A DNA stretch of 64,000 nucleotides from assembly GCA_002269645.1 (NCBI GenBank), contig NIVC01002287.1:1-64000 (forward strand). The letters are read 5' to 3'. Positions within the stretch are counted from its first letter, which is position 1. Every line of letters begins with the position of its first letter. Source of the DNA: Macrostomum lignano. Its lineage: Eukaryota. A model generated the notes under the pieces. The model saw only the letters and a program-made list of their open reading frames with translations. It was not told the origin of the DNA and did no database searches. Position numbers and translations under genes: made by a program. Below, piece after piece: positions 9,941-63,975 of this stretch.

Positions 9941-10519
9941 CCCGGAAATTACACTTGCGGAGGTACTGCTTCAGGAGTTCCGCTTAAAATCTTCGCGATG
10001 ATGTTAGAATGGTTAAACAATAAAATGTAAATAAACAGATATCTTTAGTTTGGTTAATAAATAACTATACTTACTACTGACCTTGGGCACTGTCAGTAGT
10101 GTCAGCAATCACTCTCAACATTCCTGGGTGTGGTACGCAACTATCAACCCTGAGCTATCGGCTCCTAATGCCCCCCCCCCCATTTTTCAGCTCGTGGGTA
10201 TGCGAAAGTCGCACTTGTAGCTGCTGCTGACTAAGTTCGCTTTCTCTCTCGCATAATTCCATTTGTAGACTGGCGCCTGTGCAAAACTGTTTATGCAACA
10301 AGGTACGGTATATCAAATAATCTAATCTGCATGTCCGCTCTTTGTGCATTGGTCAGGCTACAAAGTTAATGTATTCGCCACTTTAATGTTAGTCGCGGGC
10401 CGATTGCTCCAACAGACCCCAACATATTGCTTTATTCGGTACGTGAAAGCAGTGGCAAACCTTAACAGTTTTTCAGTGCTTTTGACATAAAACAGAAACT
10501 GGTTTGCATCTTAGAAAGC

Positions 10520-13500
10520 ATGATAGCAAGGGAGTCTGTTTTGCTGCCACTGCTGCTGCTGGTTGTGCTTCACTTCCTACCCATTCAGCAGGCCCAGCTG
10601 CCTGATGAAGCATCGCTCATGGCCATCTTTGTCGGACGGTGCAATGAATTCCAGCTGCTGCGACACCCGGAACTATTCCCTCAGATGTGAGTGCCGGGCG
10701 GTCAATGCAGTAGTTGTCAGGGAGACGCGGGGGGCATCATTTCATAGGGACAGTAGTTAATGCCAAACGCAGTCCGCAATCAGTTAATCGCGGCTTACTG
10801 TTGTTGATCTGTCAGTTTTTGTAAAAGCCAGTCTATAAAAAAACGGCATTCAGGAGTCAAAGATTGATGCAGCGTCCAGACTCCAAGAGTTTCAGCTGCA
10901 TCTATTTGATCGAGATAGTTGTAAAGTAGCGAGGTATTTAAAATCGTCATCAGAGAATTATCAATAAAAGCTTACTTGACAAGCGCCATTAAAAGCTTTA
11001 AGGTACACGATGCATCACGAATATACACTATGCAGTACTTTATTGCCTATATGATCGTCTACGTCCTAATTGACAGCTGAAATTTATTAATCATGTCATG
11101 GCTGATTTAAACATTTCCTCAAATTAGACAGACAAAACATATCGAAAGCGCACTAAATTGTTTCTATGCTCGGTATATCTTGCCATAGAATAAAACTTTG
11201 TCTCCTTTAAGTTTGAGTTTTAAAGGCTCCGCCCCCAAAGAAAAACTCCGCCCCCAAAAAAACAGTTTTGTCTCCGCCCCCCACGCCCTCATCCTGCTCC
11301 CTCAGTTTTCATTCAATCCGTGCATACATAAGGTGCCATTTTGTAGATAATTGATAGATTTAGTGCATGGGAGTATTTTCGCAATACGTTTGTATGCAAA
11401 GTTTTCGAGCTATCTGCAAAAATCAAATTTCGTACATAATTAGTACTTCAATTGGGTATTACGGGCAGATAAAAATTGACGCATTTAAACAAAAATCCAA
11501 ATATCATTCTATAATTCCCTGTGATTTTAATCATCTAAGTTAATTAGATTGTTTGCTACATACAGCAGTTGCTTATTTTTGCGGGTTACATTTTCACTGA
11601 AAAAAGGGCCGTTTTGGATGTTTTTTTGAGATTTTTCGAATACAAAAGAGGTATCGAATATCCGTTTTTGTTATTTCATTGTAAAATTCCATCTTTTCTA
11701 CGCATTTTGACACCTGGCACAAATTAAGGGACCAGACGTAAAATTTAGAGCAGTTCTTTATCGAAATTCATCATCCAAAATTGTGACCAGACCACCTTTG
11801 CTAGCGATGGCAAAATATTTCTATCGTGGTTAATGATAGCATAAACAAGGAGAAATTATTCATCTTTGACCAAATCAACCATCGAAGAGTAGGTTCCTTC
11901 AATGCAATTGTCCGAATATGCACTGACTGCAAATACAGTCGTGAGTATGGCTGTAATCACAGTGACGAAGACGTTCATCGCAAAGAACACTTTGTCGGCT
12001 GACGCTACAACAATGCTCCACTCATTGTCTTGCAGGGGACTTGGCGGGATGTCTCCATCAGAGACCTCAGTCTGGTCAGCTGTATCTTGAGCAGCATGCA
12101 CCTGTGGTTTCCTCCCAGTCACGAGTCGGTTAAGGAATAGAGCACGGATCAGCCGGTTGCTGACGTGAGCGCTGTTGTGCTGCTTGGAGTGACACCTCAG
12201 CACGAATATGTTGCAAAGCGCGTTCAGAATTGTCATCACTGCTGCGATGCTGAAGTACCAAGCTGCAATGGAAATTGTGACCACATGAGCGTACATGTAC
12301 GTACAGAGATTTGGTCAGCAGAACGAATATCTCGCGACTCACTGATGAGTGGTACGGACTCGCTCTGCGTGGGCGTGTAGTTGCCAGCCAGCTGCAGGAA
12401 CACGTACATCGACAGCACGATGGTGATGCTGAAGGAGACTCGCTCACCGCAGTCTGGAGGCATTCGGAATGCGAATGCAGAGATGGCGAGCAGGAGGATG
12501 CTCGGAAAGAGCAGGTTCGTCACGTAGAACGCCGACCGTCTCTTAAAAGAAGCAATGCAATCAAATATTTTCAGGTCGATGTGTTCAAATTGGTCCATTC
12601 AAAAGACTACCGAGGCTTTTTGAACGCGCGAAATGATCAGTTCCGTGCGAAGTTTAGCAACTTGCACAGTCCCTAGAGCCAAAATCAAATGGTAAATGTG
12701 TATAAACTAATCTACGTTTGCATTTAATGATTGGATCATCAGGTCCACGATCCTACTTTCGGCTCTAATGAGTGGGCTAAAATGTGTATTTCATATGAGT
12801 TATAGATAGGCTCTATAGGTTGAAAGAAGCCTGAAGTCCCGTAAGGCTTAAACGGAGCTGCAATAATAATAATCACAGGATGCTGTGGACACCCTGACGC
12901 AACGCCTTCAGTGACATCTCCGCTGACTCCTGAGCACATGCAAGCGCGCACCAATACTGTGCACAGTGACGCACTCATACAGCACGCTCACACAGGCTGT
13001 ACAGCGGCCAGCTGACTTGCTAATCGTCAGATTTGAGACAGGTACATTCTCTGCGCCTTTGATATTGATTATCACAGGTGTGAGAATCACGGAATCGAAC
13101 CCGGGTCATGTTGCGAGAGTCAGACACATTTTACCGCTGAGCTACGAAATCATCCTTAGAAAGTTTAGCGAACATAATGATTTCTTACCTGAAATTTAAG
13201 CACAAGAATAACTGCATCAACTACATCCAATCGATGCTCCTCTAAAAATACTCTCTTGATGCAGAATTCGTTGTTCCTTGACAAGTATTTTTCCGGAGGA
13301 AAGTCTCTGTCGAAATGTATCTTCAGCATTGTTTGGTCAGGTGAATTTTTAGACCTGATGCTAAAGCCGCATTTCTGACTGTCAAAGGGAAAATATTGCA
13401 TCTCCATCTGACACTTAAACGTGACAAGCAGCACTTTCTCGTGTCGAACCAATCCATAGTTATAAATTGAAACAGGTGGCTCATCCAGTGAAATATCATT

Positions 13501-16500
13501 TATCCCCAACCTGTAATAGATAGGGAAAAATCATTATTAAATTGCCGCGAGATTCAGAAAACGGGGCCTCAACTTACACATTGTCAACAGAAACATCCGG
13601 TATCCAGACCATTTTTGAGGGAACGGATATTTTCTGCACTCTGCCCAATGACGAATTAGACTTCGTCATCCATGATAGGCGAGCGTCGAGCCATTGCTGC
13701 AGCAAGGTTTCGAAAAGCTTCTTTATAGCAGGTTCTTTTCGTAATGAAATCCCCCCCTAATCAATACAAGCAAGTACTGACCTTCGAAAGAGAAAACTGC
13801 AGTGTCACTTCCTGAGACGCAGAGTCCTGTGAAATCGACAAGGACTAGTAATAATTAAATCAATGTCTCCTAGAGCTTCGGAAGATATCAACTCACCACT
13901 TTGACGAGGCTAAACAGAAAGATGACCAAGGTCACAGTGTTTGCGGTGCCATTGTCCGGGGGCGGCCGGACCGCCCTGTTGTAGTCGGTGCCAAGCTTCA
14001 GCGCCGCCATCATGGCAGCGTCTGGCGAGGCTACATCGGCAGCTTCAGTGGTTGAAGCAGCGAGCAGAGCAGCGAAGAAGACGATGAGGCAACTGGGAGG
14101 AACCATGACGGACTAAGTCTGACTGATTGCGACACATGATAAGGGAACCATCTGAGCGAAAGGATTTTATAGCGTGTGTTAATAAACGGTAATTAAACAG
14201 CAATATTCTGTTGTTTGCACTGTCAGGAAATGTTTCATTTTCTGACTCCATTAACTTCATTGGATGGTGGATTTGCACTATTTTATTAAGAATCGCTTCT
14301 GTGTCCGCCTCCCGAAACAAAGGAAAATGCAATTTAATAATGCAAATATCAGACCCCATCAGCTCCAGACAAAAGTTAGTAGCACGTTCGTCGCATTTCG
14401 CCTAAACTCATTTACCGAATTTTTGAGGGAATGATCGTAAAAATGCTGGTTGAGTAGTCCGGCGCCAATATTGCCGAGTGTTCTACATATCAGTGGGGGA
14501 AATTAGTCGCACGACTCAGATACTATGGGGGAAAATTCAAGTCTTTTCTATAGGTGACAGTTACTTAGAAGTACAATAATCGGATTCGTTACTGATTTAA
14601 TAAGTGTTGTAAGCAGAGAATATCGAGTATGCATAGAATGCCAATAGAGGGGTCTAAAGTGGAGCCGATTTTCGTTCCTTCCGGGACTCTTCTTATTGGC
14701 CATGCGTTAATTTTTTAAAGCAGTTGCTTATTTTTGCGGGTTACATTTTCTCCGGAAAGGGCCGTTTTAAAAGTTTCTGGCATTCTTCGAATACAAAAGA
14801 GGTATCAAATTTCCGTTTTTTTATTTCATTGTAAAATTCCATCTTTTCTATGCATTTTGACACCTGGCAGAAATCAAGGGACGAAACTTTATCGAAATTC
14901 GTCATCAAAATTGTTCCCCGGATCTCACTATCAACTCCCTTCGGTCGTAGCCAGGAATTTCCGGGTATGCACTTAGAGTTCGGGCCATAGACAGCTCGTT
15001 GTATCAACTAATTTTTGCGCTTTCTCTATCACTCAATTTGCGGGGTTGATAATGGCACAGCTAGGTATTGGACCGCCAGGCAAAAGGCCACTCGATGGAA
15101 CGATGTATGTATGTATTTCATGTATGTTTTTTCATGGCCTCTAAGTCTGCGGCCTTGAGCCTGACTGGTTACCTATGAAGCCCGAAGGCGTTTGCTTGTA
15201 AAAGATAATTTTACGTTCGACTAGAGAGCTATGCACGGGCTCTGCTTGAGTCAATAAGGATTACCAAGTCTTCAATCTCTCTTGAATAGACAGGAAGATA
15301 GCAGGTATATTAATCTGTAAGTGCACAATGTAGCCTTGCTATTCTAGCAAATATTTAGCTATTGGAAACCCGCACTTTGCAGATCCAGCCGAAAGAACTG
15401 CTCCCGGCTGTGGGAAGAGTTTCGCTTCGTCGCCCTGCAACCGGACCACTGTCGGCCGGAGCCTGATGATTTTGCGGGGCTGCTGCAAATGGCCAATCAC
15501 GAAATTCCAGTTGACAAGGTGTGACTAACATGACTGTGTTTTCATGCACCATTTCAACTTAGAAATCCCATGGCAAGCATAGGGGGTTTTAGCCTAGTGC
15601 TTAGAGCGTAGGACTCATGATTGAAAGGTCGGGGGTTCGATTCCTGGAACAATTTGTGTCCTTGAGAAAGACACTTAACTCTGCATTGCTTCAGTCCAAC
15701 CAGCTGTTAAATGGACATCAGCATTAGCTGGGGTAATTGAGGGTGCGTGGCGACCCCCAATCCTTGCAGCCCTTCAATCCTTTCATAAAATAGCTGCGGC
15801 TGAGCTCTCGGTTGCACATCAGCCAATTAAGGCAGGTGTATTCAATTATTATTAGTATTATAGGTAATGCCAGTTTACAACACAAGTGCAATAGCAGACA
15901 TGATAAGTAATTTTAGATCCAGGAAATAAATGCTGCATGTACTGTTAGAGCACTGACTAGTGATGAGTGGTGTTAGAGTAATTCCTTCAAAGGTGACTCC
16001 TTTGGACAAAGGTGACAACTAGCTGGATGGAGAGGGTTCACTACTGCGAGTTGGCTTTCATGGGTTCGCACCTCTGATCCCCATAGTAACTAATTGTTAG
16101 TCAGTTGCTGCAAGGTAGATCTGCTGGCCGTAAAACGGAAACTGATCTTCATCAGGTTTAACCTGCTGAGCCTGAACTGAACTTTACTCAGACACCGCTC
16201 CGCAATGCTTCTCAACACACAATTTGCAGTTTGTGTTCTGGTCCGGCACCGCCTACAGCCTGGTTATCAGGGTGCGCGATATGCCCGAGTATTTCCCATT
16301 GGAGGAGACTCTGATCGGTGAGTTGAGCTGCCCGCCTAGCCGTTATTTTTGTGACACAAGCCTTCAGCTTGTTTTACCAGGAAAACAACCCAAGGCCGTT
16401 GGGGTTCGAGCCCCTTCCACCCTTAAATGAAACGGCACTTTCCTGAAATGGCGTTCGGGATTGATGGCTGTGATCAGTGAATACCTTAACAATCCTGAAT

Positions 16501-19500
16501 TTAAATGAAATCGATGTTTCATTGAACGATGCGACCCGCAGGGTTCATCATGAACTCCATGGACTGGTGCAACTACCGCTGCGACGTCAACACCAGGGGT
16601 AGTAAAATTTCTCTGAGAAGAAGGCGATCAACCAACAGTCAGGTGACGCGTCGGGACAGCTGCACCAACTTTACCTTGCCTTTCTGGATTGCCGCTTCCA
16701 GTTGGGTGAGCAACAGACTTTGTTGCTAGGCATAATTTTAGTGCAGACAGCGTCTCTGCTGAGTGCATTGCTGAGTACCGATTGGTGTGGCAGTGTCTGC
16801 TGGGTGCATTGCTGAGTACCGATTGGTGTGGCAGTGTCTCTGCTGAGTGCATTGCTGAGTACCGATTGGTGTGGCAGTGTCTGCTGAGTGCATTGCTGAG
16901 TACCGATTGGTGTGGCAGTGTCTGCTGAGTGCATTGCTGAGTACCGATTGGTGTGGCAGTGTCTCTGCTGAGTGCATTGCTGAGTACCGATTGGTGTGGC
17001 AGTGTCTGCTGAGTGCATTGCTGAGTACCGATTGGTGTGGCAGTGTCTGCTGAGTGCATTGCTGAGTACCGATTGGTGTGGCAGTGTCTGCTGAGTGCAT
17101 TGCTGAGTACCGATTGGTGTGGCAGTGTCTGCTGAGTGCATTGCTGAGTACCGATTGGTGTGGCAGTGTCTGCTGAGTGCATGACTGAATACCGATTGGT
17201 GTGGCAGTGTCTGCTGAGTGCATTGCTGAATACCGATTGGTGTGGCAGTGTCTGCTGAGTGCATTGCTGAGTACTGATTGGTGTGGCAGTGTCTCTGCTG
17301 GGTGCATTGCTGAGTTCCGATTGGTGTGGCAGTGTCTCTGCTGGGTGCATGATTGAGTAGCGAATGATGTGGCAGTGTCTCTGCTGGGTGCATGATTGAG
17401 TAGCGAATGATGTGGCAGTGTCTCTGCTGAGTGCATTGCTGAGTACCGATTGGTGTGGCAGTGTCTGCTGAGTGCATGACTGAATACCGATTGGTGTGGC
17501 AGTGTCTGCTGAGTGCATTGCTGAATACCGATTGGTGTGGCAGTGTCTGCTGAGTGCATTGCTGAGTACTGATTGGTGTGGCAGTGTCTCTGCTGGGTGC
17601 ATTGCTGAGTACCGATTGGTGTGGCAGTGTCTCTGCTGGGTGCATGATTGAGTAGCGAATGATGTGGCAGTGTCTCTGCTGAGTGCATTGCTGAGTACCG
17701 ATTGGTGTGGCAGTGTCTGTAACTTATAACACGGAGATCCTTTCGGCAAATCGTCTTCAGTCATCTGGCAGGCGCTTCTTCACCAATTTTGAGCAGCTAA
17801 AAAAACTGCAGCACCGGGACTGGAGCAAATCCCTGGACTCGCCGCCCTAAGCTGCAATTATTTTTCACTGCATTTGTAATTTTAGGCGTGATAGTTAGCA
17901 TCGCCGTTGATTCTAATTTCGATTCTGCAGACAAGGCAAACAGAGAGACGCGGGTCGGTGAGGTTTGACGAGCTGGGGCTCTGAGAATTCCAGAAAATCT
18001 TATTAAATTCGAGATGTTATCTTTTGCAAAGGATTATCATGGCAATAAGTGCTAATGTCAAACACCTCACTTATCCAGAACGTGAAGAATTTCTTATCGC
18101 ACTTGAAATATTTGAAAATGCCCATCTTTATTTGAGTGCGCTAAGAAGAGAATGAATAATCGATTTATCTTCACTTTATGCTCACAGTATCCTGGTTTGG
18201 AGAGCACAGTTAATTCTTATGACATTTGAACAATACTGAATAAACAAAAATCTTCCGCCTTGACAATCAATAAGTTTGCAGGCAAATCTACAGGAAAAGT
18301 GTCCGTCTTACTGAACGCATCTGTGGCGAATCCCTTCCGAGAGACCTCGTGAGTTATCCACCTCCACCGAAGTTCTTGTCAAATTAGTCTTCGTCTCACC
18401 ATTAGGCATGTCAGAGACTTGAGGTTTATAATTGCACAGATGGGGGAGACTGGGGTTTATAATTGGACAGATGGGGGGGACTGGGGTTTATAATTGCACA
18501 GATGGGGGGGACTGGGGTTTATAATTGCACAGATGGGGGAGACTGGGGTTTATAATTGCACAGATGGGGGAGACTGGGGTTTATAATTGCACAGATGGGG
18601 GAGACTGGGGTTTATAATTGCACAGATGGGGGAGGCTGGGGTTTATAATTGCACAGATGGGGGAGACTGGGGTTTATAATTGCACAGATGGGGGAAACTG
18701 GGGTTTATAATTGCACAGATGGGGAGACTGGGGTTTATAATTGCACAGATGGGGGAGACTGGGGTTTATAATTGGACAGGTGGGTGGGAAGATTGGGGTT
18801 TATAATTAGACAGGTGGGGGTGACTGGGATTTATAATTAGACAGGTGGGGGAGACTGGGGTTTATAATTAGACAGGTGGGGGAGACTGGGGTTTATAATT
18901 AGACAGGTGGGGAGACTGGGGTTTATAATTGGACAGGTGGGGGAGACTGGGGTTTATAATTGGACAGGTGGGGAGACTGGGGTTTATAATTGGACAGGTG
19001 GGGGAGACTGGGGTTTATAATTGGACAGGTGGGGGAGACTGGGGTTTATAATTGGACAGGTGGGGGAGACTGGGTTTATAATTGGACAGGTGGGGAGACT
19101 GAGATTTATAGTTAGACAGGTGGTGGAGACTGCGGTTTAAAATTGGACAGGTGGGGAGACTAGGGTTTATAATTGGACAGGTGGGGAGACTGGGGTTTAT
19201 AATTAGACGGGTGGGGGAGACTGGGGTTTATAATTGGACAGGTGGGGAGACTGGGGTTTATAATTGGACAGGTGGGGAGACTGGGGTTTATAATTAGACA
19301 GGTGGGGAGACTGGGATTTATAATTAAACAGGTGGTGGAGACTGGGATTTATAATTAGACAGGTGGGGGAGACTGGGGTTTATAATTAGACAGGTGGGGG
19401 AGATTGGGGTTTATAATTGGACAGGTGGGGAGACTGGGGTTTATAATTGGACAGGTGGGGAGACTGGGGTTTATAATTAGACGGGTGGGGGAGACTGGGG

Positions 19501-20980
19501 TTTATAATTGGACAGGTGGGGAGACTGGGGTTTATAATTGGACAGGTGGGGAGACTGGGGTTTATAATTAGACAGGTGGGGGAGACTGGGATTTATAATT
19601 AAACAGGTGGTGGAGACTGGGATTTATAATTAGACAGGTGGGGGAGACTGGGGTTTATAATTAGACAAGTGGGGGAGATTGGGGTTTATAATTGGACAGG
19701 TGGGGAGACTGGGGTTTATAATTGGACAGGTGGGGAGACTGGGGTTTATAATTGGACAGGTGGGGGAGACTGGGATTTATAATTAAACAGGTGGTGGAGA
19801 CTGGGATTTATAATTGGACAGGTGGGGGAGACTGGGATTTATAATTAAACAGGTGGGTGGGGAGACTGCGGTTTATAATTGGACAGGTGGGGGAGACTGG
19901 GGTTTATAATTAGACAGGTGGGGGAGACTGGGGTTTATAATTGGACAGGTGGGGGAGACATGTTTATAATTGAACAGGTAGGTGGGGAGACTAGGGTTTA
20001 TAATTAGACAGGTGGGAAAGACTGGGGTTTATAATTAGACAGGTAGGGGAGACTGGGGTTTATAATTAGACAGGTGGGAAAGACTGGGGTTTATAATTAG
20101 ACAGGTGGGGAGGCTGAGGTTTATAATTAGACAGGTGGGGAGGCTGGGGTTTATAATTGGACATGTGGGGGAGACTGGGGTTTATAATTGGACAGGTGGG
20201 GAGGCTGGGGTTTATAATTAGACAGGTGGGGAGGCTGGGGTTTATAATTAGACAGGTGGGGAGGCTGGGGTTTATAATTAGACAGGTGGGGAGGCTGGGG
20301 TTTATAATTAGACAGGTGGGGAGGCTGGGGTTTATAATTAGACAGGTAGGGGAGACTGGGGTTTATAATTAGACAGGTGGGGAGGCTGGGGTTTATAATT
20401 AGACAGGTGGGGAGGCTGGGGTTTATAATTGGACGGGTGTGTGAGACTGACAATCAAAAAATTACAACGTCTATAATTTTCTTTCACCCTGAAAATCCAT
20501 TGAGGATCTTCGGCCAGTTCGAGCTGCCCCAGCTCAGCCCGCCGCGGATTAGCCAGGTCGATGTCTACCCGCTGCGCTCGCTCAACGATCCGCGTCTGGC
20601 GTCTGCTTACAGCGCCTGTCGGATGGATCCGTCAGTGCTGCGACTGCGGCAGCGGCTGCTGTTGAAAGGCGTACGGGTCAACTGTCAGGACAATCCGCTG
20701 TGAGCGTTATTGTGCTAGTGCAGAGTATAAGTATTCTGTCTTTTTCATTTAACTCTGTTCTGTTTCTGCTCTGTTTCGGTCTGTTCCCCGCATCAGACAG
20801 ACATCTCGCCCACTCCGCAGGTTTCTCGTGCACACTCTCTGCTCGGAGTCTCCGCAGGCTGAGCGCTGTCAACTCATCGGGAGGTCAAAGTCGGACTCGA
20901 GCTGGCTGGCCGCCGGGCCGCTGCGACAGCTTCTGTGGGCCGCCGCTGCGATGGCCCTGACGGCCTGCTTTGTGAATTGA
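10520..20980 (+). CDS. ADP-ribosyl cyclase / NAD+ glycohydrolase (CD38/CD157/Aplysia cyclase family), signal peptide plus GPI-type C-terminus
   Basis: Phase-consistent exons 10520-10686, 15383-15518, 16230-16317, 16542-16705, 18275-18348, 20505-20699, 20821-20980. A possible upstream in-frame start exon ends at 10302 (ATG 10293). Motifs: IFVGRCNEF, NCSRLWEEF, FVFWSG, PLEETLIG, MDWC, PFWIAASS, VSVLLNAS, IFGQFELPQL (catalytic Glu), NCQDNP, LCSESPQAERC, then a hydrophobic tail LLWAAAAMALTACFVN*. Confidence 0.9.
11565..11785 (+). repeat. ~210-bp dispersed repeat, copy 1
   Basis: AGCAGTTGCTTATTTTTGCGGGTTACATTTTC...CGAATACAAAAGAGGTATC...CATTTTGACACCTGGCA recurs at ~14719-14915 in the same orientation. 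Confidence 0.8.
11856..14106 (-). CDS. Divergent nicotinic-type pentameric ligand-gated ion channel subunit (non-alpha, cation-selective signature), nested in the cyclase intron
   Basis: Exons 14106-~13897, 13826-13782 (the 45-nt exon typical of nAChR genes), 13696-13578, 13510-13189, 12541-12343, 12262-11856. Signal peptide, YNRAVRP, WLDARLSW, WIPDV, Cys-loop CQMEMQYFPFDSQKC, M1 proline, M2 GERVSFSITIVLS, M3 and M4. No vicinal cysteines. Confidence 0.92.
12880..13145 (-). mobile_element. tRNA-derived SINE, family A
   Basis: Minus-strand A box TAGCTCAGCGG and B box GGTTCGATTCC, followed by a body containing GCTGTACA...GTGCTCAGGAGTCA and a (TTA)n tail. Related pieces at ~2835-2875, 4560-4638 plus 5467-5530, ~9440-9940, ~30030-30100 and ~54515-54700. 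Confidence 0.65.
14719..14915 (+). repeat. ~210-bp dispersed repeat, copy 2
   Basis: Colinear with 11565-11785, with scattered substitutions and small indels. Confidence 0.8.
15585..15860 (+). mobile_element. tRNA-derived SINE, family B, with conserved central domain (Meta/V-domain-like)
   Basis: A box TAGCCTAGTGC, B box GGTTCGATTCC (15634), then GTGTCCTTGAGAAAGACACTTAACTCTGCATTGCTTCAGTCCAACCAGCTG and an (ATT)n tail; second copy at ~53560-53845. Confidence 0.7.
16752..17720. repeat. Intronic minisatellite, 41/43-bp unit
   Basis: GCTGAGTGCATTGCTGAGTACCGATTGGTGTGGCAGTGTCT tandem copies. Confidence 0.95.
18422..20440. repeat. Intronic G-rich minisatellite, ~30-bp unit
   Basis: GACTGGGGTTTATAATTGGACAGGTGGGGGA tandem copies. 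Confidence 0.95.
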
Positions 20981-21435
20981 GAAGACACAGGCTTGCTTAT
21001 CAACTGACATTTCCGAATCACTCTGATAATTTGTCTCTGCTTTTTGAAAGACTACTCAGCTCGTACGTAAGAGATAGCAGGCGTGACTTTTCTTTTGACA
21101 GAAACTTAGCATTTTGCATTGGTACTGATTTGTTTGCTATTAATACAATACCTAAGTTTTTTTATAAATTCGAACGATGCAGATCTATATTGGTCGTTTG
21201 GCCTTTCGCAGCGATGATAATTTTCGCCTGTTAGATGCTGCTTAAAATTATTCTCCACAATTGTCCTATTTTACGGCCTTTAGGATGCTTCTAAATTTTG
21301 CAACCTTTACAGCAACCCTGAGAATCGATAAAAACGATTTTAACGATTTATATTCAGCAGCACTGGTTTTCATAATTTATGTTCAAAACTTGCTGCATCA
21401 AGAATTCCCTGCAGTTTGTGTTGACTTTATTTTAA

Positions 21436-24192
21436 CCATGAGCAGACGGATGGCCCGAATTCGGGTCATGGCTCAACACCCAAAGCCAACGGGAATTTTT
21501 TATATCTATGGCCAAAAAACCAGCAAAATTGGCACACCCGTTCTGGACTGATGTGGCCCGAAAACGGGTCAAGTAGTGGCCAATAAGATAGTGAAAACGC
21601 ACTTAGAAAAGATAGCCTGTAACAAAACAAAGTAATTTCAATTACTCATATATTTTTCTTCTGTTTAAAAGTTAACGGTTTAAGTTATATTAGAACATAG
21701 TGAAGTGGGGTCATTTCTTTACTGGTCAAAACTGGAGGGAAGCTGTCACAATTGTCATGCTGTCACGTCATTTTCTGTGGAGTTGATTTTAGAAAACTTT
21801 TAGAAAACTGGAAAGAAACAGGTAATCTAAAAGCAACAAGCATCTAAATTTATTATAACTCCAAATTAATACGGAATAATGTAATTTCTATCCACGATAA
21901 TGCAACAAATATATTGTTTTATTTCAAGGGGCCTTGGTGCTAGGACTGAGGTCTAGGAGCTGAGAGACCGGGTCCCTGGATTGATTGCGAATCCTCGCCA
22001 TCTCTAACACCCCCTGCCTCCCCCCGTCTCTGCGCCTGCGGTTATCACTCGGCGAATCCGCCCCTTCCTATTGTAATTCCCTCACCTCTACCCCTCTGCT
22101 TATGACCCTACCCTCTTCTACTGTTTTCTGATTCCTACGTCCCATATTAGTAGTTTCTGTAACCAGGACAATTTCTGGACTATTTGGAACCAGGGGCTGT
22201 GGTGGCACCAGTTCAAAATGGAGTCAAAATAGAAAAGCAAATGTGCGGAAAGGGTGGATACTACAATATTTTCTATACTGTCTAATACACATCGCCAGGC
22301 GTCAGACCTAATTGGTATGAAATTGCATGAAGCAAGCACCAAGGCAGAGTGCTGGCATTCCCGGGCAAGCTTCGCATACAAACACTGTCTTCTTCAATTG
22401 GCCAGCCGCATAGCATACTCGGCATCGTTTGCGTGGCCGAGCCTGGTCCCCGTGTCTGGGAGCTTTGCTTGGAGAATGAGCAGCAGCTCCATTGCCTACA
22501 GCTTCAGCGCCAGCACCGGCAGCTGCTCCATCTGGCATTCGACCGCGTCGCCTGGCAACACCAGTGTCCTCCAACAGATATTTGACTGCGAGCCTTATAA
22601 ACTGCAAGAAGGTCTTTGTTCCGCCCGATTGCTTGAAGATGACCCAGGCATTTCTCACAAGCATCAGGAAAAGGTGGAACCCAAGCTTGTGGAACCAGCG
22701 CATGCTCTTACGATTGGCTAGGTATGGGTGCATTGAAGCGTCCAGATGGTCAACACACCCATGCTGGCACAGTATGCTAACACACTTACAGGCTTCGGCA
22801 CCACCTGCACGGCACCTCCACGACGGGTACGATGGACCTGGATGCAATCAGCTTTTCCTGCTGTATCTAGCAGATATACAGTTTTTGTGCCGCTCTGCTT
22901 CCTGTCGACAAATTTGCAAGCCAGTAGGTCCCCTGAGCGAGCGAATGCAGATGAAGTCGGATGTAGGTTGGCAGCTTGCAGTTCAGCTGGGATACCGCGG
23001 TTTTTCCGTACTGTTCCGGTTAGCAGCGTATCATGCTGCAGCAGCCAAGTAGCCAGCCGCTGAGACGTAAACCAACTGTCGGTGAAGACGTGGTGTCCAA
23101 GATTAAGCAAACCGCGGCACAGTTCTGCAACAACCTTCTCACTCATCGTCAAGTCCTGACACCCGAGGCCTTCATCGAACTGATTATTGACCTCCGGGAA
23201 TGTGTGGACGACGAAGTTCCATAAGTACGCAGTCTCACAGATACAATACATTTTAATTCCGTATTTACTTTTCTTTGTTGGAATGTACTGTTTAAAAGCA
23301 ACTCTGCCCTTGTACAAAACGAGTGTCTCATCAACCGACAGTCGCTGCCGTGGCATGTAATTGTTGCTGCACAGATGCTTTACGCTGTGCAGAAAGGGCT
23401 CCATCTTTGCCAGAGGGCCGTCTCCTAAAGCCTCAGCGCAGTTGTAAAAACGCAGGCAGGACAGCAGCTGCTTGAAGCGGTCTCTTGAGAGCGAGAATGG
23501 CTTGGCCAGAAGGGAGCAATGAAACGCTGGATCGGTTGACCAGTATAGTTGGCGATTTCCGGCTTCTTGTCGACACCCATCAAAAGCACGATTCCCACTA
23601 ACTTACGAACTTCATCCGTCGTTGAGTCCCGCCATTTCAACACTTGCTTCGGCAGTGCAGCCTCTGTTTCGGCTTCTTGAAAGATTCTCCAAGCCTTAGC
23701 ATTAGTCCAATTGCTGAGGTCTTCGAACAACTGGTCTGGAAAAAAAAGCTTTAGGAAAGCATCTTCGTTTCCATCAGCAGTTGGTGGAGGCTGCCAGTCT
23801 GGTCGGATGCCAGGTGTTCCGAGAAAATCGGGTAGGGCTGATGGCCTGTTGTCCTCATTCGGTTGAACCATGTGCCACCCACCGGCTTGCTCGTTGTTCT
23901 CAGCGATGTCCATCTTTCGAAAAGTTTCGAAAGTTTCGAAAGTTTCGAAAGTGGAATACTGACTCAACGAAGTATCAGAGTCGAAACTGGCGTCTGAATC
24001 CATGTATATTTGCTTGAAACAGAAAATCTCTGTGCAAACTCTACGCGCAGGCAGTCAATAAGTATAAGTGAAGTCTATGTAGAAACTCTGTGGTACTTTA
24101 GAAACTGTTCCCGGCGGGAATGGGTGTGAGCATTACAAGAAAAAATTTGTCTATGGCCCGATTTCGGGCCAAGCCGTCGGGAACGGGTGTGG
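21436..24192 (-). mobile_element. piggyBac element with near-complete PGBD4-like transposase (CDS 24003-22308, two frameshifts)
   Basis: Motifs FLKLFFPD, SRDRFKQLL, LSVDETLVLYKGR, QYIPTKKSKYGIK, FTDSWFTS, GTVRKNR, GVDHLD and C-terminal CRVC...CEACP...LC. TTAA at 21432-21435. Inverted degenerate GGCCCGA(A/T)TTCGGG motifs at ~21450-21575 and ~24150-24190; the ends are approximate. Confidence 0.85.
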
Positions 24193-27100
24193 ACCAAAGA
24201 GAGGTCAGTCTCGTAGTCGTTAAGACAAAATTAGGAACATTTGAGAAGCCTACTGAGTCGGTATTTGCTTTGAATTCAGCCAGGGAAGCCTCTATGGTCG
24301 AAGCGCAGTGACGATAGAGGCTTCCCTGATTCAACTTTAAAATGCAAGCAGATGTACCAGGCGTACAAATGTATCAAATGTCCTTTCGGCCCACAGACTA
24401 TGGCAGCTGCTGATGTCTATGGGACAAAAGTACGAGTAGATGCTTGCCGAGCGGCTTCAGTTGCGAGGGCTGCCTTGGCATTCTATATTAACTATAGATA
24501 TTTCTCCGGTTCGAGCTGCATTTATAGGTCACAGCTGCATTCTGGGACTGTTTGCTGCTCTCCAATAGTACTTTTCAGCATGTCAATAGACCAATTATTA
24601 GTTTGGAAGCTGAGCTATTACCAATATAGTGCCAACATTAAAGTTGCTGTCCTCCGTTGTCTGCAAAAAAACTTAAAGGATTAACAAAATGTTCAGCAAT
24701 TCTTATAAAACTGTTTTGTATTAGACAGCATTTCAATAATTCCAACGCTTTTTGAAGTTCACAATTTTTTTCGCTAATTCGAGTTGAGTCTCTTGCATAG
24801 TAAAAAACGAACTTCAATAAATCTATAGGAGGGTATGCTGTGGCAGCAGTGAGTTGCGACATGCAAGCCTGCAGCAAGTCTTCCCTATGCTTACCATGCA
24901 AATGTATATCTCTTTTCTATTCAGCGAACGTGACTTGGAATTCGCATTTCTCACTCTGAATGAACGCCTCTGCACAGCACTAAAGCATCCGGATTTTAAG
25001 TTAGTTCCGATAGTCCACACGAGAGTAATTCAATTTCAGAAATAAGCCGTTTGCTACAAGCAGAAGTCTTTCAAAGACTTGTTATTTGCATTTGTCGTAT
25101 AGCTATGTCACACAGTGCTATGGCAGGCTGCTTGTTTTGCCCGCATTCAGGGCTCTCAAAACTGTCGTTTCCGTGGCGCGAACAAACAGCTTAAAGTCAA
25201 AGTCGCTGGTGATAATAAAGTTAGACAGTAGTGTTGACAGCACACTATAACAGCGCAGTTCAAAATGCTATATGCTTGCCCGTAGAAAATCTATACTTGG
25301 AACTTCTGCTTATAACATTTTCTTTGCATAATACGCCACACACCTACTAGTTCCAAATTCTTGTACTTCAAAACTAAGCCTTGAAGGCTGAAAGGCTGAA
25401 AAGATACTGTAATGTTAAACTAGTTTTTTTGTAAGCTATCCAAATTCGAAGAAGTATTAACAAATGACTTTCAAGCAGCTAATGTGCATCCAAGTTGAAC
25501 GAATGCATCTTCAATGAGACAATGCATACAGAAAAACGGTTAAATGTAAATGTTGTCGGATACGGATTTTGATATTGCAATCCAAACAATATTAGTATAG
25601 CTTCCGTGTAGGTTTTTGGGCTTTAAAGAACTCACGGTAGCAAATGCTCTGTGTGACTTTCTTCTAAAAATCACGGACACATTAATTCTTTACGTTGGGT
25701 ACATAAAGAACTGTATTGACAAGGCAAATACGAGCCAGTCTGTAGCTGTCTTATAAACGGATCTGAATTGCTATTCATGTAGTTTTCCGCCTTTATCGCA
25801 TTTTGCTAAGCTCATCCCTTTTTACGCTAAAAAAATCACGCGCCAATAGCAAAAATTAATCCAGTTATAACTACCCGAGTTCTCTTGATTTCGGTTGATT
25901 GTACAATGCAGCACATATATATGTCTCGTTAGCGTTTCAAGACTTCCGTTTTGTACATTTTAGTTTTTTGTTTTGCTTTCCCGCTAAGCGCATGATGTTG
26001 GTCTAATTAGCCTCTATGAAGCCTGTGCTCGAACTGTTTACGTTCTCTAGTACACCAAATTTTAGACCCACTTGTGACTCTTGGGACTGTGCTTAAAGGC
26101 AACAATCGAAGTGCTTATTTATACACACAGATTAGTTTAAAATTAAAGTTTTTATCTCTTTCTGCTTGGTTGTTAGCTCAGAAAAAATATATAGACAAAA
26201 TAGGGTCCATGAACGTCAGAAAATACACTTTTTCCTAATTTTCACCTGTGTGCATTTGTTATAATATGTATATTCATCAAAGCTTCACCTCCGTTTCTAA
26301 CATGGTCTTTTTAAAAGAACTGCATAACTGCATAATTTTGTGTTTTAGGCTTAGCTATGCTCTTTAAAGTAGAATTGTTTTGCTGCTCAAACTTTTACCC
26401 AATATGACAATTGAAGCTGTTACAAGCATCTTCAAAGTTACAATAAAATGCTTTCTTTTTCGAAAACTTTATTACTTTCTGTTACAATCTACTAAACTGA
26501 AAAATTATTAAACTATTAATAAATGCTAGGCCTATCGCCATACAGATGACTGTAAATCTGTATGATTACTGTCTGACGGACGAAGACTGCTTAATTTTAT
26601 GTTGGCCTATTTAACAGAAAACAATAAAATAGAATATTATATACAACAATATGCTTAGCCCTCTTCAATTTGTTGTTTTTACACCATATATTAGTGCCTA
26701 CTTTACTACATCATTTAATTGTTAACCAAAAACTCTTGCTTTTGCATTAGATTTTAAGCTAATATAGTTATTTAAATAGATATTCTAATCAATTCACCAT
26801 CAATGAATTTTTAGCTGAGCCTATTGCTGTTTAAACTATGAACAATCATCTTCTATAAAAGCTTACTTACAGGTTTTTATTTAAATATCTTATTTAAATT
26901 TAAATGTGACATGTTTTGTTCATTTAACATAGTTTTTTCACTGTATTTTAGTACAGAACAGTTAATTATATCAGTGAGTAAAACATATTAATAAAAAAGA
27001 TGCAATTTAATTGTCAATATTATTTAAATATTCAGTCAAATTTGTATTCAATTCATCAAACTTTTTTTGCAAATCAAAATGTTCTGTTTGTTTATTTAGC

Positions 27101-27247: not shown

Positions 27248-27730
27248 ATGCACTCCATGGTAAGCGAGGCCACCCGGCAGCTCCGCATTAATGACGCCTT
27301 TGCCAATGCTGACGCCGACTCGGATGGCCGGCTTTGCCGCGGTGACGTGAAGGTCGCCTGGATCGAGCTCTTTGGCTACAAGCCCTGCCGCAGGGAGCTC
27401 GACCTCATCATGCAGTCGCAGCCCGCAGTTGCTGGCCCCACTGATGATTTCGTGACTCTCGACACCTTCCGGCGACTGGCTTCAGCTCGGATGTCGCGTC
27501 TGGACGCCGATGGTCAGCTCCGGCACGCCTTTGCCGCGCTGGACTCCGGCGGCCGGAATTTCCTCCGGGCCGAGGACCTGCGCCGCGCTGTCGGTCTCCT
27601 TGCGCCGCGATTGGCTGCCGGCGGCTTCGCCGTTGACCGCGCTTTCGCCGAAGTGGACGCCGACGCTGACGGCCGAGTCACCTATCGGGACTTCGAGTTC
27701 GCCATGAAGTTTGACCCGGATCAGCGATGA
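27248..27730 (+). CDS. EFCAB11: EF-hand calcium-binding domain protein 11-like, single coding exon
   Basis: Shares diagnostic EFCAB11 segments LFGYKP, LRHAFAALD..GRNFL..EDL, APRL and EVDADADGRVTYRDFEFAM. Confidence 0.85.
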   Translation: MHSMVSEATRQLRINDAFANADADSDGRLCRGDVKVAWIELFGYKPCRRELDLIMQSQPAVAGPTDDFVTLDTFRRLASARMSRLDADGQLRHAFAALDSGGRNFLRAEDLRRAVGLLAPRLAAGGFAVDRAFAEVDADADGRVTYRDFEFAMKFDPDQR

Positions 27731-51007: not shown

Positions 51008-59132
<8,125 letters not shown>

Positions 59133-62233: not shown

Positions 62234-63699
62234 TCATACTTTAATCTGCTGTCCGCGCCGGTCCACAAGGCGCTGGCGCAGATCAATCAGGCTCTGCCGG
62301 ATGCCGTCCAGAGATTCTAACGCTGCCTCCACTGCCGAGGCCAGCTGTTCGACATCCACAGGCTGCTGCGGCCCGCCCTCAGCTGCCGGCGTGGACGACT
62401 GAGACGCCGGCTGGTGCTGGTGCGGCAGCAGGGCGGCCTGGTCCAGCAGCACCTGCAGCCGATTGCAGCGGGCGTGCAGGCTGCAGAAGCAGATCAGCAG
62501 AAGACAGCAGAGAGCAAGCAGGCAGCCAACCACAAGCCGGCCACTGCCAACGCTGGTGGAGCGTTGAAAGAAGGCGCCGCTGCTGACGGGGGAAGCGCCG
62601 TCGGCTGGCAGGGGCGGCGCAGCGGACTGCAGGTCGGGCACGAGTTCGTCAGCTTCCAGAGCGTCGACGCCGCCGACCGCGGCCAAGCTGGCGGCCGAGG
62701 CGTCGGCGTCCTCAACGGCGGCCGGATTGGCGCCGGCGGAGTTGGGCAGGCCGGGCGCGCCGCGCGCCGCCAAATAGCTGATAAGGCAGGCGCGCATGGC
62801 GCTAAAATGCTCCGCTAAGCCTTTCTTAGCCGAGCTGTCAATCAGGTTGCGCACAATTTTAAAGAGCGACCGAGTGAAGCGCAGATCGGTGGTGACGCGC
62901 AGCCTGCAGGAGTCCGGGCCGTGGCCGCGCAGGCAATAGCGGGCCCGGGTGTGGAAGCTGTCGCAGTAGGGCACCTCCCGGCTGCGCACCGTGACGTCGA
63001 CGCAGTAGGAGCGGCCAGGCCGGCAGTCGGCCAGGCGGTAGGCCTGCTCCTCCACCTGCTGGGCCGAGCGCGGGCCCACGGCGTTGTTCAACGGCAGGGT
63101 GAAAGTCACCCGGCGGGCGCGCCATTCAACAACGTCGGCCGCGGAATCGACGACTGCTGCTGATTCCGTCATCGCCTGATCGACTGCCGGCGGCAGCGCC
63201 GGGCGCCAGGGCTCGGCGCAGACGTCCGTCATGCCGCGATGACGGGCGAACTGGCGGAACCAGGCGGACTTGTGAGCGAACAGGCACTGGAACACGGTGT
63301 CTACATTGGCTGGCAGCTGTACATTCAGATATTCGTCGGCGAAGTGCTCGTGCCGATCGCACGGGTCTGCCGAGTGGTCGCCGGCCTCGCTAGACTCCGG
63401 GTCCTCGTCGGCACCGCGGCCGCCTGTCCGACGGTTGCGCAAGCCGAACTCAGCAGCCAGCGCGTCAGCAGCGGCCGGACTGGACGAGTTACCGTCGGTG
63501 CCGCCGCCACCAGCGGCACCGCTGATGCTGGCTTCGTCGCCGCCGGTATCTGAAGCCGTCGCCTGAGCGGCATCCTCGCCGTTGGAGTCGGCGGATCCGG
63601 CGCCCACCGAGGAGCGTCTGCGGCCGGACGACGGGGCACCGCCTTGATCTGCGTCTTCTTTGTCCAGGCCTGGAACCCGGGGAGTCGGAAACACCTTTA
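62234..63699 (-). CDS. 3' exon of a VASt-domain sterol transfer protein (GRAMD1/Aster-like); 5' exons lie beyond the window
   Basis: VASt motifs VDTVFQCLF, RRVTFTLPLNNAVGPRSA, VDVTVRSREVPYCDSFHT..RYCL, CRLRV; then a TM helix LVVGCLLALCCLLLICF and a coiled-coil tail; acceptor CTCCTGTAG at 63700. Confidence 0.85.
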
Positions 63700-63709
63700 C
63701 TACAGGAGA

Positions 63710-63975
63710 ACACTCTAAAGTACATGGATACAGCGACACTCTAAAGTACAGTAGAATAAGAACACTCTAAAGTACAGGAGAATAAGAGCACACACTAAAG
63801 TACAGGAATGAGAATAAGAACATTCTAAAGTGCTAAGAACACTCTAAAGTACAGGAATAAGAACACTAAGAACACTCTAAAGTACAGGAGAATAAGAACA
63901 CTCTAAAGTACAGGAGAATAAGAACACTCTAAAGTACAGGAGAATAAGAACACTCTAAAGTACAGGAGAATAAGA
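63710..63975. repeat. Intronic minisatellite, ~27-bp unit
   Basis: AGAATAAGAACACTCTAAAGTACAGG variants. Confidence 0.85.

What the first reader, a model, noticed from the sequence alone, without database searches (positions are those of the whole stretch)
10293..20980. Hidden CD38/CD157-family ADP-ribosyl cyclase spread over 10 kb in small exons
Seen: seven small exons splice in phase into a ~300-aa protein. Most are absent from the ORF track or buried in longer junk ORFs. It has a signal peptide, GRC, FWSG, LEETL, WC, FW..AS, FGQFELP and a hydrophobic C-terminal tail. Known: these correspond to the CD38 active-site residues W125, E146, W189 and catalytic E226. The CD38-specific extra cysteine in PCNK is absent (IPVDK), and D147 is replaced by E. 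Inference: a GPI-anchored ecto-NADase or cADPR/NAADP-producing enzyme like CD157 or schistosome NACE, possibly with an altered cyclase/hydrolase ratio.
Basis: partly seen in the sequence, partly recalled or inferred. Interest (0 to 1): 0.8.

Follow-up and report, generated by a model that had tools for sequence, protein, structure and literature searches.

The report
Flatworm CD38-family NAD cyclase gene
This is a real seven-exon gene of the flatworm Macrostomum lignano that encodes a CD38/CD157-family NAD-cleaving enzyme, but it is an ordinary member of a well-known family and the identical protein is already in GenBank.

Summary
Seven GT-AG exons on the + strand (10520-20980) join in frame into a 327-aa protein. 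It matches Pfam Rib_hydrolayse (PF02267) end to end (166 bits, E 1.4e-48). Its predicted fold matches CD38 and Aplysia ADP-ribosyl cyclase.

Two coordinates needed correction. The start codon is at 10520, not 10293. Exon 5 starts at 18275.

All catalytic residues are present: W105, E126, W179 and E216, equivalent to CD38 W125, E146, W189 and E226. There are ten ectodomain cysteines, a signal peptide and a GPI-type hydrophobic tail.

The gene is not hidden. The window is the first 64 kb of M. lignano contig NIVC01002287.1. The corrected protein is identical to GenBank PAA59199.1 (BOX15_Mlig004070g1), a model built from RNA-seq transcripts. Near-identical UniProt entries are already named ADP-ribosyl cyclase/cADPR hydrolase.

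Two features are mildly interesting. It keeps the tryptophan that the schistosome NACE homologue (seen here in the S. japonicum sequence) has replaced by histidine. It also carries a lineage-specific basic loop containing RRRR.

The most likely function is a GPI-anchored ecto-NAD glycohydrolase/ADP-ribosyl cyclase. The biochemistry is untested. Interest is low.

The parts
10520..10686 (+). Exon 1 (aa 1-56). Start codon at 10520. Predicted signal peptide is about aa 1-25 (10520-10594). The first conserved Cys is C41, in GRC (10640-10642).
   Evidence: The donor is gtgagt at 10687.
15383..15518 (+). Exon 2 (aa 56-101). Contains C62 and C79, sequon N61 (NCS), and IPVDK where CD38 has PCNK (no Cys).
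   Evidence: Acceptor is tttgcag|, donor is gtgtga.
16230..16317 (+). Exon 3 (aa 102-131). FWSG with W105 (16239-16241), equivalent to CD38 W125. LEETL with E126 (16302-16304), equivalent to E146, and E127, equivalent to D147.
16542..16705 (+). Exon 4 (aa 131-185). N135 (equivalent to Aplysia N107 and CD38 D155), WC with C140, the displaced C144, C171, and FW with W179 (16685-16687), equivalent to CD38 W189.
   Evidence: The strong donor gtgagc is at 16706.
16571..16660 (+). Lineage-specific basic loop within exon 4 (aa 141-170, NYRCDVNTRGSKISLRRRRSTNSQVTRRDS). The RRRR run is at 16616-16627.
   Evidence: There are 39 residues between WC and FW, against a mode of 28 in 127 relatives. AF2 pLDDT is below 50 for residues 141-169. 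The longer stretch analysed (aa 141-171) has 9 basic and 2 acidic residues.
18275..18348 (+). Exon 5 (aa 186-210). Core beta-strand VSVLLNAS with sequon N199, and R207, equivalent to Aplysia R170.
   Evidence: The acceptor is ataag|TTTGCAG.
20505..20699 (+). Exon 6 (aa 210-275). I211 (20506-20508), equivalent to Aplysia F174 and CD38 T221. F212. Catalytic E216 (20521-20523), equivalent to CD38 E226 and Aplysia E179. Also C248 and C270.
20821..20980 (+). Exon 7 (aa 275-327 plus stop). C282 and C291. Candidate GPI omega region S299-S302 (20891-20902). Spacer WLAAGPLRQ. 16-residue uncharged tail LLWAAAAMALTACFVN (20930-20977). TGA at 20978-20980.

Best explanation
The locus is a functional, expressed Macrostomum lignano gene (GenBank BOX15_Mlig004070g1) for an ADP-ribosyl cyclase/NAD glycohydrolase of the CD38/CD157/Aplysia-cyclase family.

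Shown:
- Seven exons encode 327 aa with a full-length Rib_hydrolayse domain.
- The catalytic residues are intact and the predicted fold is that of CD38 and Aplysia cyclase.

Inferred mechanism:
1. An N-terminal signal peptide (about aa 1-25) takes the protein into the ER.
2. The domain folds with five disulfides from ten cysteines and is N-glycosylated at up to three sequons (N61, N173, N199).
3. The C-terminal signal (small residues S299-S302, a 9-10 residue spacer, then a 16-residue uncharged tail that ends the protein) is exchanged for a GPI anchor. The enzyme then sits on the outer face of the cell, as CD157 and schistosome NACE do.
4. E216 cleaves the nicotinamide-ribose bond of NAD(P)+. 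W105 and W179 position the substrate. E126, N135 and W179 hold the nicotinamide.
5. The ADP-ribosyl intermediate is either hydrolysed to ADPR or cyclised to cADPR. Base exchange to NAADP is possible.

The enzyme keeps Trp105, where the schistosome NACE homologue (S. japonicum, P0173) has His, and it has Aplysia-like N135, R207 and F212. I therefore expect measurable cyclase activity alongside NADase activity.

My sub-probabilities: family member and real gene 0.98; catalytically active 0.8; GPI-anchored 0.6; appreciable cyclase activity 0.5.
For: - PDB sequence hits are Aplysia cyclase at about 5e-25, BST1 at 1e-21 and CD38 at about 1e-13 to 1e-16. The AF2 model has pLDDT 75.9. Foldseek top hits are all CD38 or Aplysia cyclase, probability 1.00, TM 0.71-0.78 on the target.
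- Residue map, with references verified and residue roles taken from PMC2785692.
- Family table: among the 127 relatives, W105 is W in 119, E216 is E in 119 and W179 is W in 124. Nine of the ten Cys align with conserved family Cys columns.
- Gene model: all sites are GT-AG and the exons are in frame. The protein is identical to PAA59199.1, annotated at exactly 10520-20980. That annotation is transcript-derived.
- Selection: the second genomic copy differs by 6 nt in the 984-nt CDS, 5 synonymous plus D169E, while introns differ in sequence and length.
- Architecture: a signal peptide plus a terminal hydrophobic tail is shared with BST1, S. japonicum NACE and most invertebrate relatives. SmNACE is reported to be GPI-linked (PMC7549896).
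- Schistosome comparison: S. japonicum NACE has His at the W105 column.
Against: - There is no enzymology, localisation or direct read-level junction data here.
- The GPI anchor and signal-peptide cleavage are rule-of-thumb readings; no predictor was available. The -3 residue before the likely cleavage site is Gln, which is not small.
- The loop between C140 and C171 is rearranged. The middle Cys (C144) lies only 4 residues from C140, with a 26-residue basic stretch after it. The usual C160-C173-type disulfide is therefore uncertain, and the region is modelled with pLDDT below 50.
- The only flatworm relatives studied experimentally, the schistosome NACE enzymes, are reported as almost pure NADases.
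- Ile at the F174/T221 position has not been characterised in the papers I read.
- Evidence for purifying selection rests on only six substitutions.
Confidence: 0.8

Rival explanations
1. Same family and same surface location, but functionally an NADase only, like schistosome NACE or CD38. On this reading it serves extracellular NAD scavenging through nicotinamide salvage rather than production of Ca2+-mobilising messengers.
For: SmNACE, a flatworm enzyme, is reported to make only trace cADPR and to feed NAD salvage. The aromatic Phe174 that directs cyclisation in Aplysia cyclase is not present; the residue here is Ile211. The F174G mutation shifts Aplysia cyclase towards hydrolysis.
Against: The NACE-type His substitution at the Trp125 position, seen here in the S. 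japonicum sequence, is absent; the residue here is Trp105. N135, R207 and F212 are Aplysia-like. The protein is much closer to mollusc, hemichordate and amphioxus enzymes (E 1e-23 to 1e-27) than to S. japonicum NACE (E 2.7e-11).
Confidence: 0.3
2. The enzyme is not GPI-anchored. It is either a soluble, secreted or granule-stored enzyme like Aplysia cyclase, or it is held by the C-terminal hydrophobic stretch as a tail-less type I membrane protein.
For: No GPI predictor was run. The tail is only moderately hydrophobic and Ala-rich, with Kyte-Doolittle 9-residue means of about 1.4-2.2. Aplysia cyclase, the best PDB sequence match, is soluble (the solubility is from my own knowledge).
Against: The 16 uncharged residues are too short for a typical transmembrane helix, and no cytoplasmic residues follow. 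Small residues (SDSS) lie 9-12 positions upstream. The same layout is seen in GPI-anchored BST1 and in schistosome NACE.
Confidence: 0.3
3. The locus is a pseudogene, or the gene model is an artefact, so that chance exon-like pieces have been joined.
For: The most obvious exon 4/5 junction is out of frame. Older database models of the same gene skip exon 5 or are frameshifted (P0002-P0005).
Against: A canonical in-frame acceptor exists 7 nt upstream and improves the Pfam score. The resulting protein is identical to a transcript-derived GenBank CDS. Two genomic copies keep an intact ORF, with 5 synonymous changes against 1 conservative change. All catalytic residues and the ten Cys are kept.
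Confidence: 0.03

Closest known systems
Aplysia californica ADP-ribosyl cyclase (PDB 1lbe, 3zwm)
   Same: It is the best solved-structure sequence match (E about 5e-25, roughly 28% identity). It has the same domain over its full length. It shares the ten-Cys pattern without the CD38-specific sixth disulfide. The active site matches at W77/W105, S78/S106, E98/E126, N107/N135, W140/W179, R170/R207, F175/F212 and E179/E216.
   Different: Aplysia has Phe174 where this protein has Ile211, and Asp99 where this protein has Glu127. Aplysia has no C-terminal hydrophobic tail, so it is soluble. This protein has a basic loop about 11 residues longer between the WC and FW motifs, and a displaced middle cysteine.
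CD157/BST1 (vertebrate, GPI-anchored; PDB 1isf)
   Same: Both have a signal peptide, an ectodomain and a C-terminal GPI-type signal. Both lack the CD38-specific C119-C201 pair. The PDB sequence hit scores E 1e-21, with about 27% identity.
   Different: BST1 has Ser at the E146/E126 position, Glu at the S126/S106 position and Phe at the I211 position. The two are not orthologous in any demonstrable sense: invertebrate sequences score higher.
Schistosome NACE (SmNACE/SjNACE), the experimentally studied flatworm members
   Same: Same phylum and same family. Both have a signal peptide and a hydrophobic C-terminus. The catalytic FG..ELPQL motif is shared. SmNACE is reported as a 35-kDa GPI-linked tegumental ecto-NADase.
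   Different: Identity is only 29% over the C-terminal 178 residues, and the N-terminal half is barely alignable. In the sequence examined here (S. japonicum, P0173), NACE has His where this protein keeps Trp105 and Thr where this protein has Ile211. SmNACE is reported to make only trace cADPR. M. lignano is free-living, so no host-NAD-scavenging or immune-modulation role applies.
CD38 (vertebrate type II membrane enzyme)
   Same: Same fold, with Foldseek probability 1.0. The residues W125, E146, W189 and E226 are conserved, as is the LNGS/LNAS sequon.
   Different: CD38 has an N-terminal signal-anchor, making it a type II membrane protein, and no C-terminal tail. It has the extra C119-C201 disulfide, D155 and T221. 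This protein has none of these. Identity is about 22%.

Membership tests
ADP-ribosyl cyclase / NAD glycohydrolase family (Pfam PF02267 Rib_hydrolayse) | Profile match above the curated gathering score across the whole domain | tested here: met
   165.8 bits against a cut-off of 25, E 1.4e-48, profile 3-241/241.
ADP-ribosyl cyclase / NAD glycohydrolase family (Pfam PF02267 Rib_hydrolayse) | CD38/cyclase two-domain fold | tested here: met
   The AF2 model has pLDDT 75.9. The top 50 Foldseek PDB hits are all CD38 or Aplysia cyclase, probability 1.00, TM (target) 0.71-0.78. The MSA was mostly vertebrate CD38 sequences, so the model leans on them.
ADP-ribosyl cyclase / NAD glycohydrolase family (Pfam PF02267 Rib_hydrolayse) | Catalytic Glu (CD38 E226, Aplysia E179) in the F-G-x-x-E-L/V-P context | tested here: met
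   E216 lies in FGQFELP. The column is E in 119 of 127 relatives.
ADP-ribosyl cyclase / NAD glycohydrolase family (Pfam PF02267 Rib_hydrolayse) | Two active-site Trp (CD38 W125 and W189) and the TLEDTL-box Glu (E146) | tested here: met
   W105, W179 and E126 are present. The box reads PLEETL, with E127 instead of Asp; Glu occurs here in 9 of 127 relatives.
ADP-ribosyl cyclase / NAD glycohydrolase family (Pfam PF02267 Rib_hydrolayse) | Ten core cysteines forming five disulfides | tested here: inconclusive
   Ten ectodomain Cys are present. Nine align with conserved family Cys columns: C41, C62, C79, C140, C171, C248, C270, C282 and C291. The tenth, C144, is displaced relative to CD38 C173. Disulfide pairing cannot be tested with these tools.
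ADP-ribosyl cyclase / NAD glycohydrolase family (Pfam PF02267 Rib_hydrolayse) | NAD+ glycohydrolase, cyclase or base-exchange activity | not testable with these tools
   This needs a recombinant enzyme assay.
CD38 subfamily | Type II topology (N-terminal signal-anchor, no C-terminal tail) and the extra C119-C201 disulfide | tested here: not met
   The N-terminal hydrophobic core is about 15 residues and looks like a cleavable signal. A C-terminal hydrophobic tail is present. V99 and T191 occupy the two Cys positions.
CD157/BST1-like GPI-anchored cyclases | Signal peptide plus a C-terminal GPI-attachment signal (small omega residues, spacer, terminal hydrophobic stretch) | tested here: inconclusive
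   The layout fits by inspection: SDSS, a 9-10 residue spacer, then 16 uncharged residues ending the protein. No GPI predictor or experiment was available.
Schistosome NACE type (NADase with negligible cyclase) | His in place of the CD38 Trp125-equivalent residue | tested here: not met
   S. japonicum NACE (P0173) has YFHSQ at this column, while M. lignano has VFWSG. The link between this His and loss of cyclase activity comes from my own recollection of the SmNACE mutagenesis literature and was not read here.

The most novel reading that the evidence does not exclude
The free-living flatworm enzyme is a true cADPR/NAADP-producing ecto-cyclase, which would make the cyclase-dead schistosome NACE a derived trait of parasitism. 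Its lineage-specific disordered basic loop (LRRRR|S, a proprotein-convertase-type site) replaces the conserved C160-C173 hairpin and acts as a proteolytic or polyanion-binding regulatory switch not seen in any characterised family member.
Probability: 0.12. Interest if true: 0.4.

Novelty: already known. Interest (0 to 1): 0.15.

Why it matters
Little changes for the field.

- The gene is a correctly recognised member of a textbook enzyme family, and the exact protein is already public. GenBank lists it as PAA59199.1, labelled 'hypothetical protein'. Near-identical UniProt models are already named ADP-ribosyl cyclase/cADPR hydrolase.
- The gene has modest practical value. M. lignano is a transgenic, regenerating flatworm model. 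A canonical enzyme that retains Trp would be a useful free-living comparator for schistosome NACE, which has been studied with inhibitors in the parasite. It would also offer an entry point to cADPR/NAADP calcium signalling in flatworms.
- The GenBank product name could be upgraded from 'hypothetical protein'.

Tried and rejected
1. Exon 4 to exon 5 through the strong donor at 16706 and the 'cag' acceptor at 18282. This is out of frame (977 nt), so I rejected it.
2. Rescue through a weak donor, GTTGGG at 16701. This is in frame and gives 323 aa with a Pfam score of 151 bits. I rejected it in favour of the upstream acceptor at 18275, which reproduces the deposited protein and scores 166 bits.
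3. A 44-nt GT..AG 'mini-intron' inside exon 4 that would remove the odd basic loop. I rejected it by hand count. It would shift the frame and destroy the conserved FW motif, and the deposited transcript-derived CDS retains the loop.
4. The upstream ATG at 10293 as the start codon. I rejected it because it is not in frame with the CDS.
5. A second paralogue in the window. None was found (tblastn).
6. Direct look-up of spliced cDNA contigs for my model. It was later resolved through the cluster look-up and P0195.
7. Literature search for Macrostomum plus ADP-ribosyl cyclase, and for the gene IDs. No papers were found.
8. tRNA and Rfam scans of the window, prompted by tRNA-like intronic pieces. 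Nothing was found.
9. Horizontal transfer from bacterial CD38-fold toxins. I did not pursue this. The gene has six spliceosomal introns, and all of the 15 closest relatives that carry an organism name are metazoan; several of the closest hits are unnamed assembly contigs.

Full report
**What the sequence is**

The window is eukaryotic. It has GT-AG introns, long intronic minisatellites and transposon remnants. It turns out to be bases 1-64000 of Macrostomum lignano contig NIVC01002287.1 (assembly GCA_002269645.1, Mlig_3_7). The deposited gene lies at record coordinates 10520-20980, identical to the window coordinates of my model.

**Checking the observation**

I located the seven proposed exons and translated them. 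Six of the seven joined in phase at once. Exon 4 (strong donor gtgagc at 16706) joined to the obvious acceptor cag| at 18282 gave 977 nt, which is out of frame. A weak alternative donor rescued the frame and gave 323 aa. That protein already hit Pfam Rib_hydrolayse at 151 bits, E 4.8e-44, end to end, and Aplysia ADP-ribosyl cyclase, BST1 and CD38 in the PDB.

A database search identified the organism and returned a 327-aa model that reads ...FWIAASSW-FAG-KSTGK.... This corresponds to an acceptor ataAG|TTTGCAG at 18274/18275, 7 nt upstream of the one I had used.

The final model is:
- E1 10520-10686
- E2 15383-15518
- E3 16230-16317
- E4 16542-16705
- E5 18275-18348
- E6 20505-20699
- E7 20821-20980

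All sites are GT-AG. The CDS is 984 nt and encodes 327 aa. The Pfam score rises to 165.8 bits, E 1.4e-48. tblastn finds each exon once and no paralogue elsewhere in the window. The signal-peptide ATG is at 10520.

**Is it expressed and real?**

The 327-aa translation is an exact match to GenBank PAA59199.1 / UniRef A0A267EEC4, 'hypothetical protein BOX15_Mlig004070g1'. That annotation was produced from genome-guided RNA-seq transcript assemblies (StringTie and TACO, plus a mapped de novo transcriptome) with TransDecoder ORFs (PMC5730564). All six junctions therefore have indirect transcript support. I could not inspect reads directly.

A second genomic copy (PAA79305.1, contig NIVC01000641.1, locus L001) is collinear with the window. 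Outside the minisatellites, aligned blocks are about 89-99% identical. Intron lengths differ; intron 5, for example, is 2156 nt here and 556 nt there. In the 984-nt CDS the two copies differ at six positions: five synonymous and one conservative D169E in the disordered loop. By my rough estimate, if about 73% of random changes were non-synonymous, seeing 1 or fewer in 6 has p of about 0.007. The sample is small, but it points to purifying selection on both copies. M. lignano is known to carry large duplicated blocks.

**Anatomy of the protein**

I aligned it with human CD38, human BST1 and Aplysia cyclase. The equivalences are:

| M. lignano | CD38 | Aplysia |
|---|---|---|
| W105 | W125 | W77 |
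| S106 | S126 | S78 |
| E126 | E146 | E98 |
| E127 | D147 | D99 |
| N135 | D155 | N107 |
| W179 | W189 | W140 |
| R207 | - | R170 |
| I211 | T221 | F174 |
| F212 | F222 | F175 |
| E216 | E226 | E179 |

The roles of these residues (catalytic Glu; the Glu-Asn-Trp nicotinamide triplet; diphosphate contacts; F174/T221 as the cyclase-versus-hydrolase determinant) are described in PMC2785692.

Ten ectodomain cysteines are present: 41, 62, 79, 140, 144, 171, 248, 270, 282 and 291. The CD38-only pair C119/C201 is absent (V99, T191). There are three N-glycosylation sequons (N61, N173, N199). N199 aligns with the conserved LNGS of CD38 and BST1.

The N-terminus has a short charged head and a hydrophobic core of about 15 residues, which fits a signal peptide. 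The C-terminus has SDSS, then a 9-10 residue spacer, then 16 uncharged residues that end the protein. BST1, S. japonicum NACE and most invertebrate relatives have the same layout. I read it as a GPI signal; this is inference.

An AlphaFold2 model has mean pLDDT 75.9. Its only very-low-confidence segment is residues 141-169. Its best PDB fold matches are exclusively CD38 and Aplysia cyclase.

**How typical is it?**

An exhaustive profile-free search of 1.84 billion representatives found 299 relatives with E up to 1e-3. The nearest one outside M. lignano is only 33% identical. The best named relatives are from a scallop, an apple snail, hemichordates, a nemertean, a starfish, amphioxus and lower vertebrates.

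In an alignment of 127 full-length relatives:
- The catalytic columns are nearly invariant, and this protein has the consensus residue.
- Ile at the F174/T221 column is the commonest residue (31 I, 28 F, 24 T, 18 Y).
- Glu at the D147 column is a minority state (9 of 127).
- Asn versus Asp at the D155 column is about even.

The one lineage-specific feature is the loop between WC and FW. It is 39 residues long against a mode of 28. It is strongly basic (9 K/R against 2 D/E over aa 141-171) and contains LRRRRS. The middle cysteine has moved to four residues after C140.

**Relation to schistosome NACE**

The S. japonicum NACE cluster (P0173; source names include 'NAD+ nucleosidase' and a CD38-homologue description) is a distant hit (E 2.7e-11). 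It is 29% identical over the C-terminal 178 residues only. It has His at the Trp105 column and Thr at the Ile211 column.

SmNACE is described as a 35-kDa GPI-linked tegumental ecto-enzyme that hydrolyses NAD but makes only trace cADPR. It has been linked to NAD salvage and egg production (PMC7549896; PMC7252647).

The M. lignano protein shares the ecto-enzyme layout but keeps the canonical Trp. Its active site looks more like that of the mollusc cyclase. I therefore expect NADase plus measurable cyclase activity (probability about 0.5 for the cyclase part).

**Verdict**

The gene is not hidden in any database sense. [quoted passage not shown] No paper in the searchable library discusses it, and nothing about its biochemistry is known. 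It is an ordinary, uncharacterised member of a known family. Interest is low.

**Surroundings**

- Intron 1 carries an intact six-exon gene on the opposite strand (14106-11856, 433 aa, all GT-AG) for a Cys-loop ligand-gated channel subunit. It matches Neur_chan_LBD at 2e-29 and Neur_chan_memb at 2e-18, has the Cys-loop CQMEMQYFPFDSQKC, and has GER before M2, as in cation-selective nicotinic-type receptors.
- That nested gene is not among the genes called on this contig in GenBank. It does have a counterpart model in the older M. lignano proteome (P0207).
- One old isoform model of the cyclase (P0004) contains a segment that I judge, by comparing translations by eye, to be the antisense reading of this nested gene. 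I take that to be an unstranded-assembly artefact.
- Introns 4 and 5 hold 41-bp x 23 and 31-bp x 66 minisatellites.
- Downstream lie a piggyBac-like transposase remnant inside a 3-kb insertion that is absent from the other copy, an EF-hand gene, a DEG/ENaC channel gene, an arrestin-domain ORF and a VASt-domain ORF.

Noticed in passing
window 11856-14106, minus strand (inside intron 1 of the cyclase gene): An intact nested antisense gene with six GT-AG exons encoding 433 aa, a Cys-loop ligand-gated ion-channel subunit. It matches Pfam Neur_chan_LBD at 2e-29 and Neur_chan_memb at 2e-18. It has the Cys-loop CQMEMQYFPFDSQKC, a 'GER' pre-M2 ring typical of cation-selective nicotinic-type receptors, and no loop-C Cys-Cys. 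It is not among the genes called on this contig in GenBank, but it has a counterpart in the older M. lignano proteome (P0207, 82% identity). The nearest named relatives are tapeworm and mollusc nAChR subunits.
   Followed up: partly
window 16755-17719 (intron 4) and 18414-20449 (intron 5): Two large intronic minisatellites: a 41-bp unit x 23 copies and a G-rich 31-bp unit x 66 copies (GAGACTGGGGTTTATAATTGGACAGGTGGGG). They generate long spurious ORFs. Intron 5, which holds the 31-bp array, is 2156 nt here and 556 nt in the second genomic copy.
   Followed up: partly
window 21157-24220; ORFs 22718-23404 and 23425-24003 (minus strand): A roughly 3-kb insertion that is absent from the second genomic copy (L001). 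It carries a piggyBac-type transposase (Pfam DDE_Tnp_1_7, 7e-34) split into two ORFs, so it is probably a decayed transposon just downstream of the cyclase gene.
   Followed up: partly
window 27248-27730 (+): A single-exon EF-hand (calmodulin-like) ORF of 160 aa lies about 6 kb downstream of the cyclase gene and is annotated in both genomic copies. Its position next to a putative Ca2+-messenger-producing enzyme is probably coincidence.
   Followed up: no
window 11561-11784 and 14716-14914: A direct repeat of about 200 bp (about 88% identity, 3.15 kb apart) brackets the nested channel gene inside intron 1. No other copy is present in the window. Its origin is unknown.
   Followed up: partly
window about 13070-13150 (minus strand) and about 15580-15650 (+): tRNA-like sequences with A/B-box-like motifs (GGTTCGATTCC) sit in introns 1 and 2. 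They are probably tRNA-derived SINE fragments. One has a diverged second copy at 53561-53667. ARAGORN and Rfam call nothing here.
   Followed up: partly
locus L001 (NIVC01000641.1) compared with the window: A second, collinear copy of the whole region exists in the same assembly, with aligned blocks about 89-99% identical outside the minisatellites. The cyclase CDS differs by only 6 nt. This fits the known large-scale duplication (hidden polyploidy) of the M. lignano DV1 genome.
   Followed up: partly
window 30420-36069 (-), 53135-53791 (-), 62234-63739 (-): Other coding pieces in the window: DEG/ENaC (ASC) channel exons, an arrestin C-domain ORF and a VASt-domain ORF. Gene models were not built for these.
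   Followed up: no
database models P0002-P0005 (UniProt, older M. lignano assembly): Older models of this same gene skip exon 5 and use an internal acceptor at about 20516/20517, or are frameshifted, or contain a segment I judge by eye to be the antisense reading of the nested channel gene (P0004). [quoted passage not shown]
   Followed up: partly
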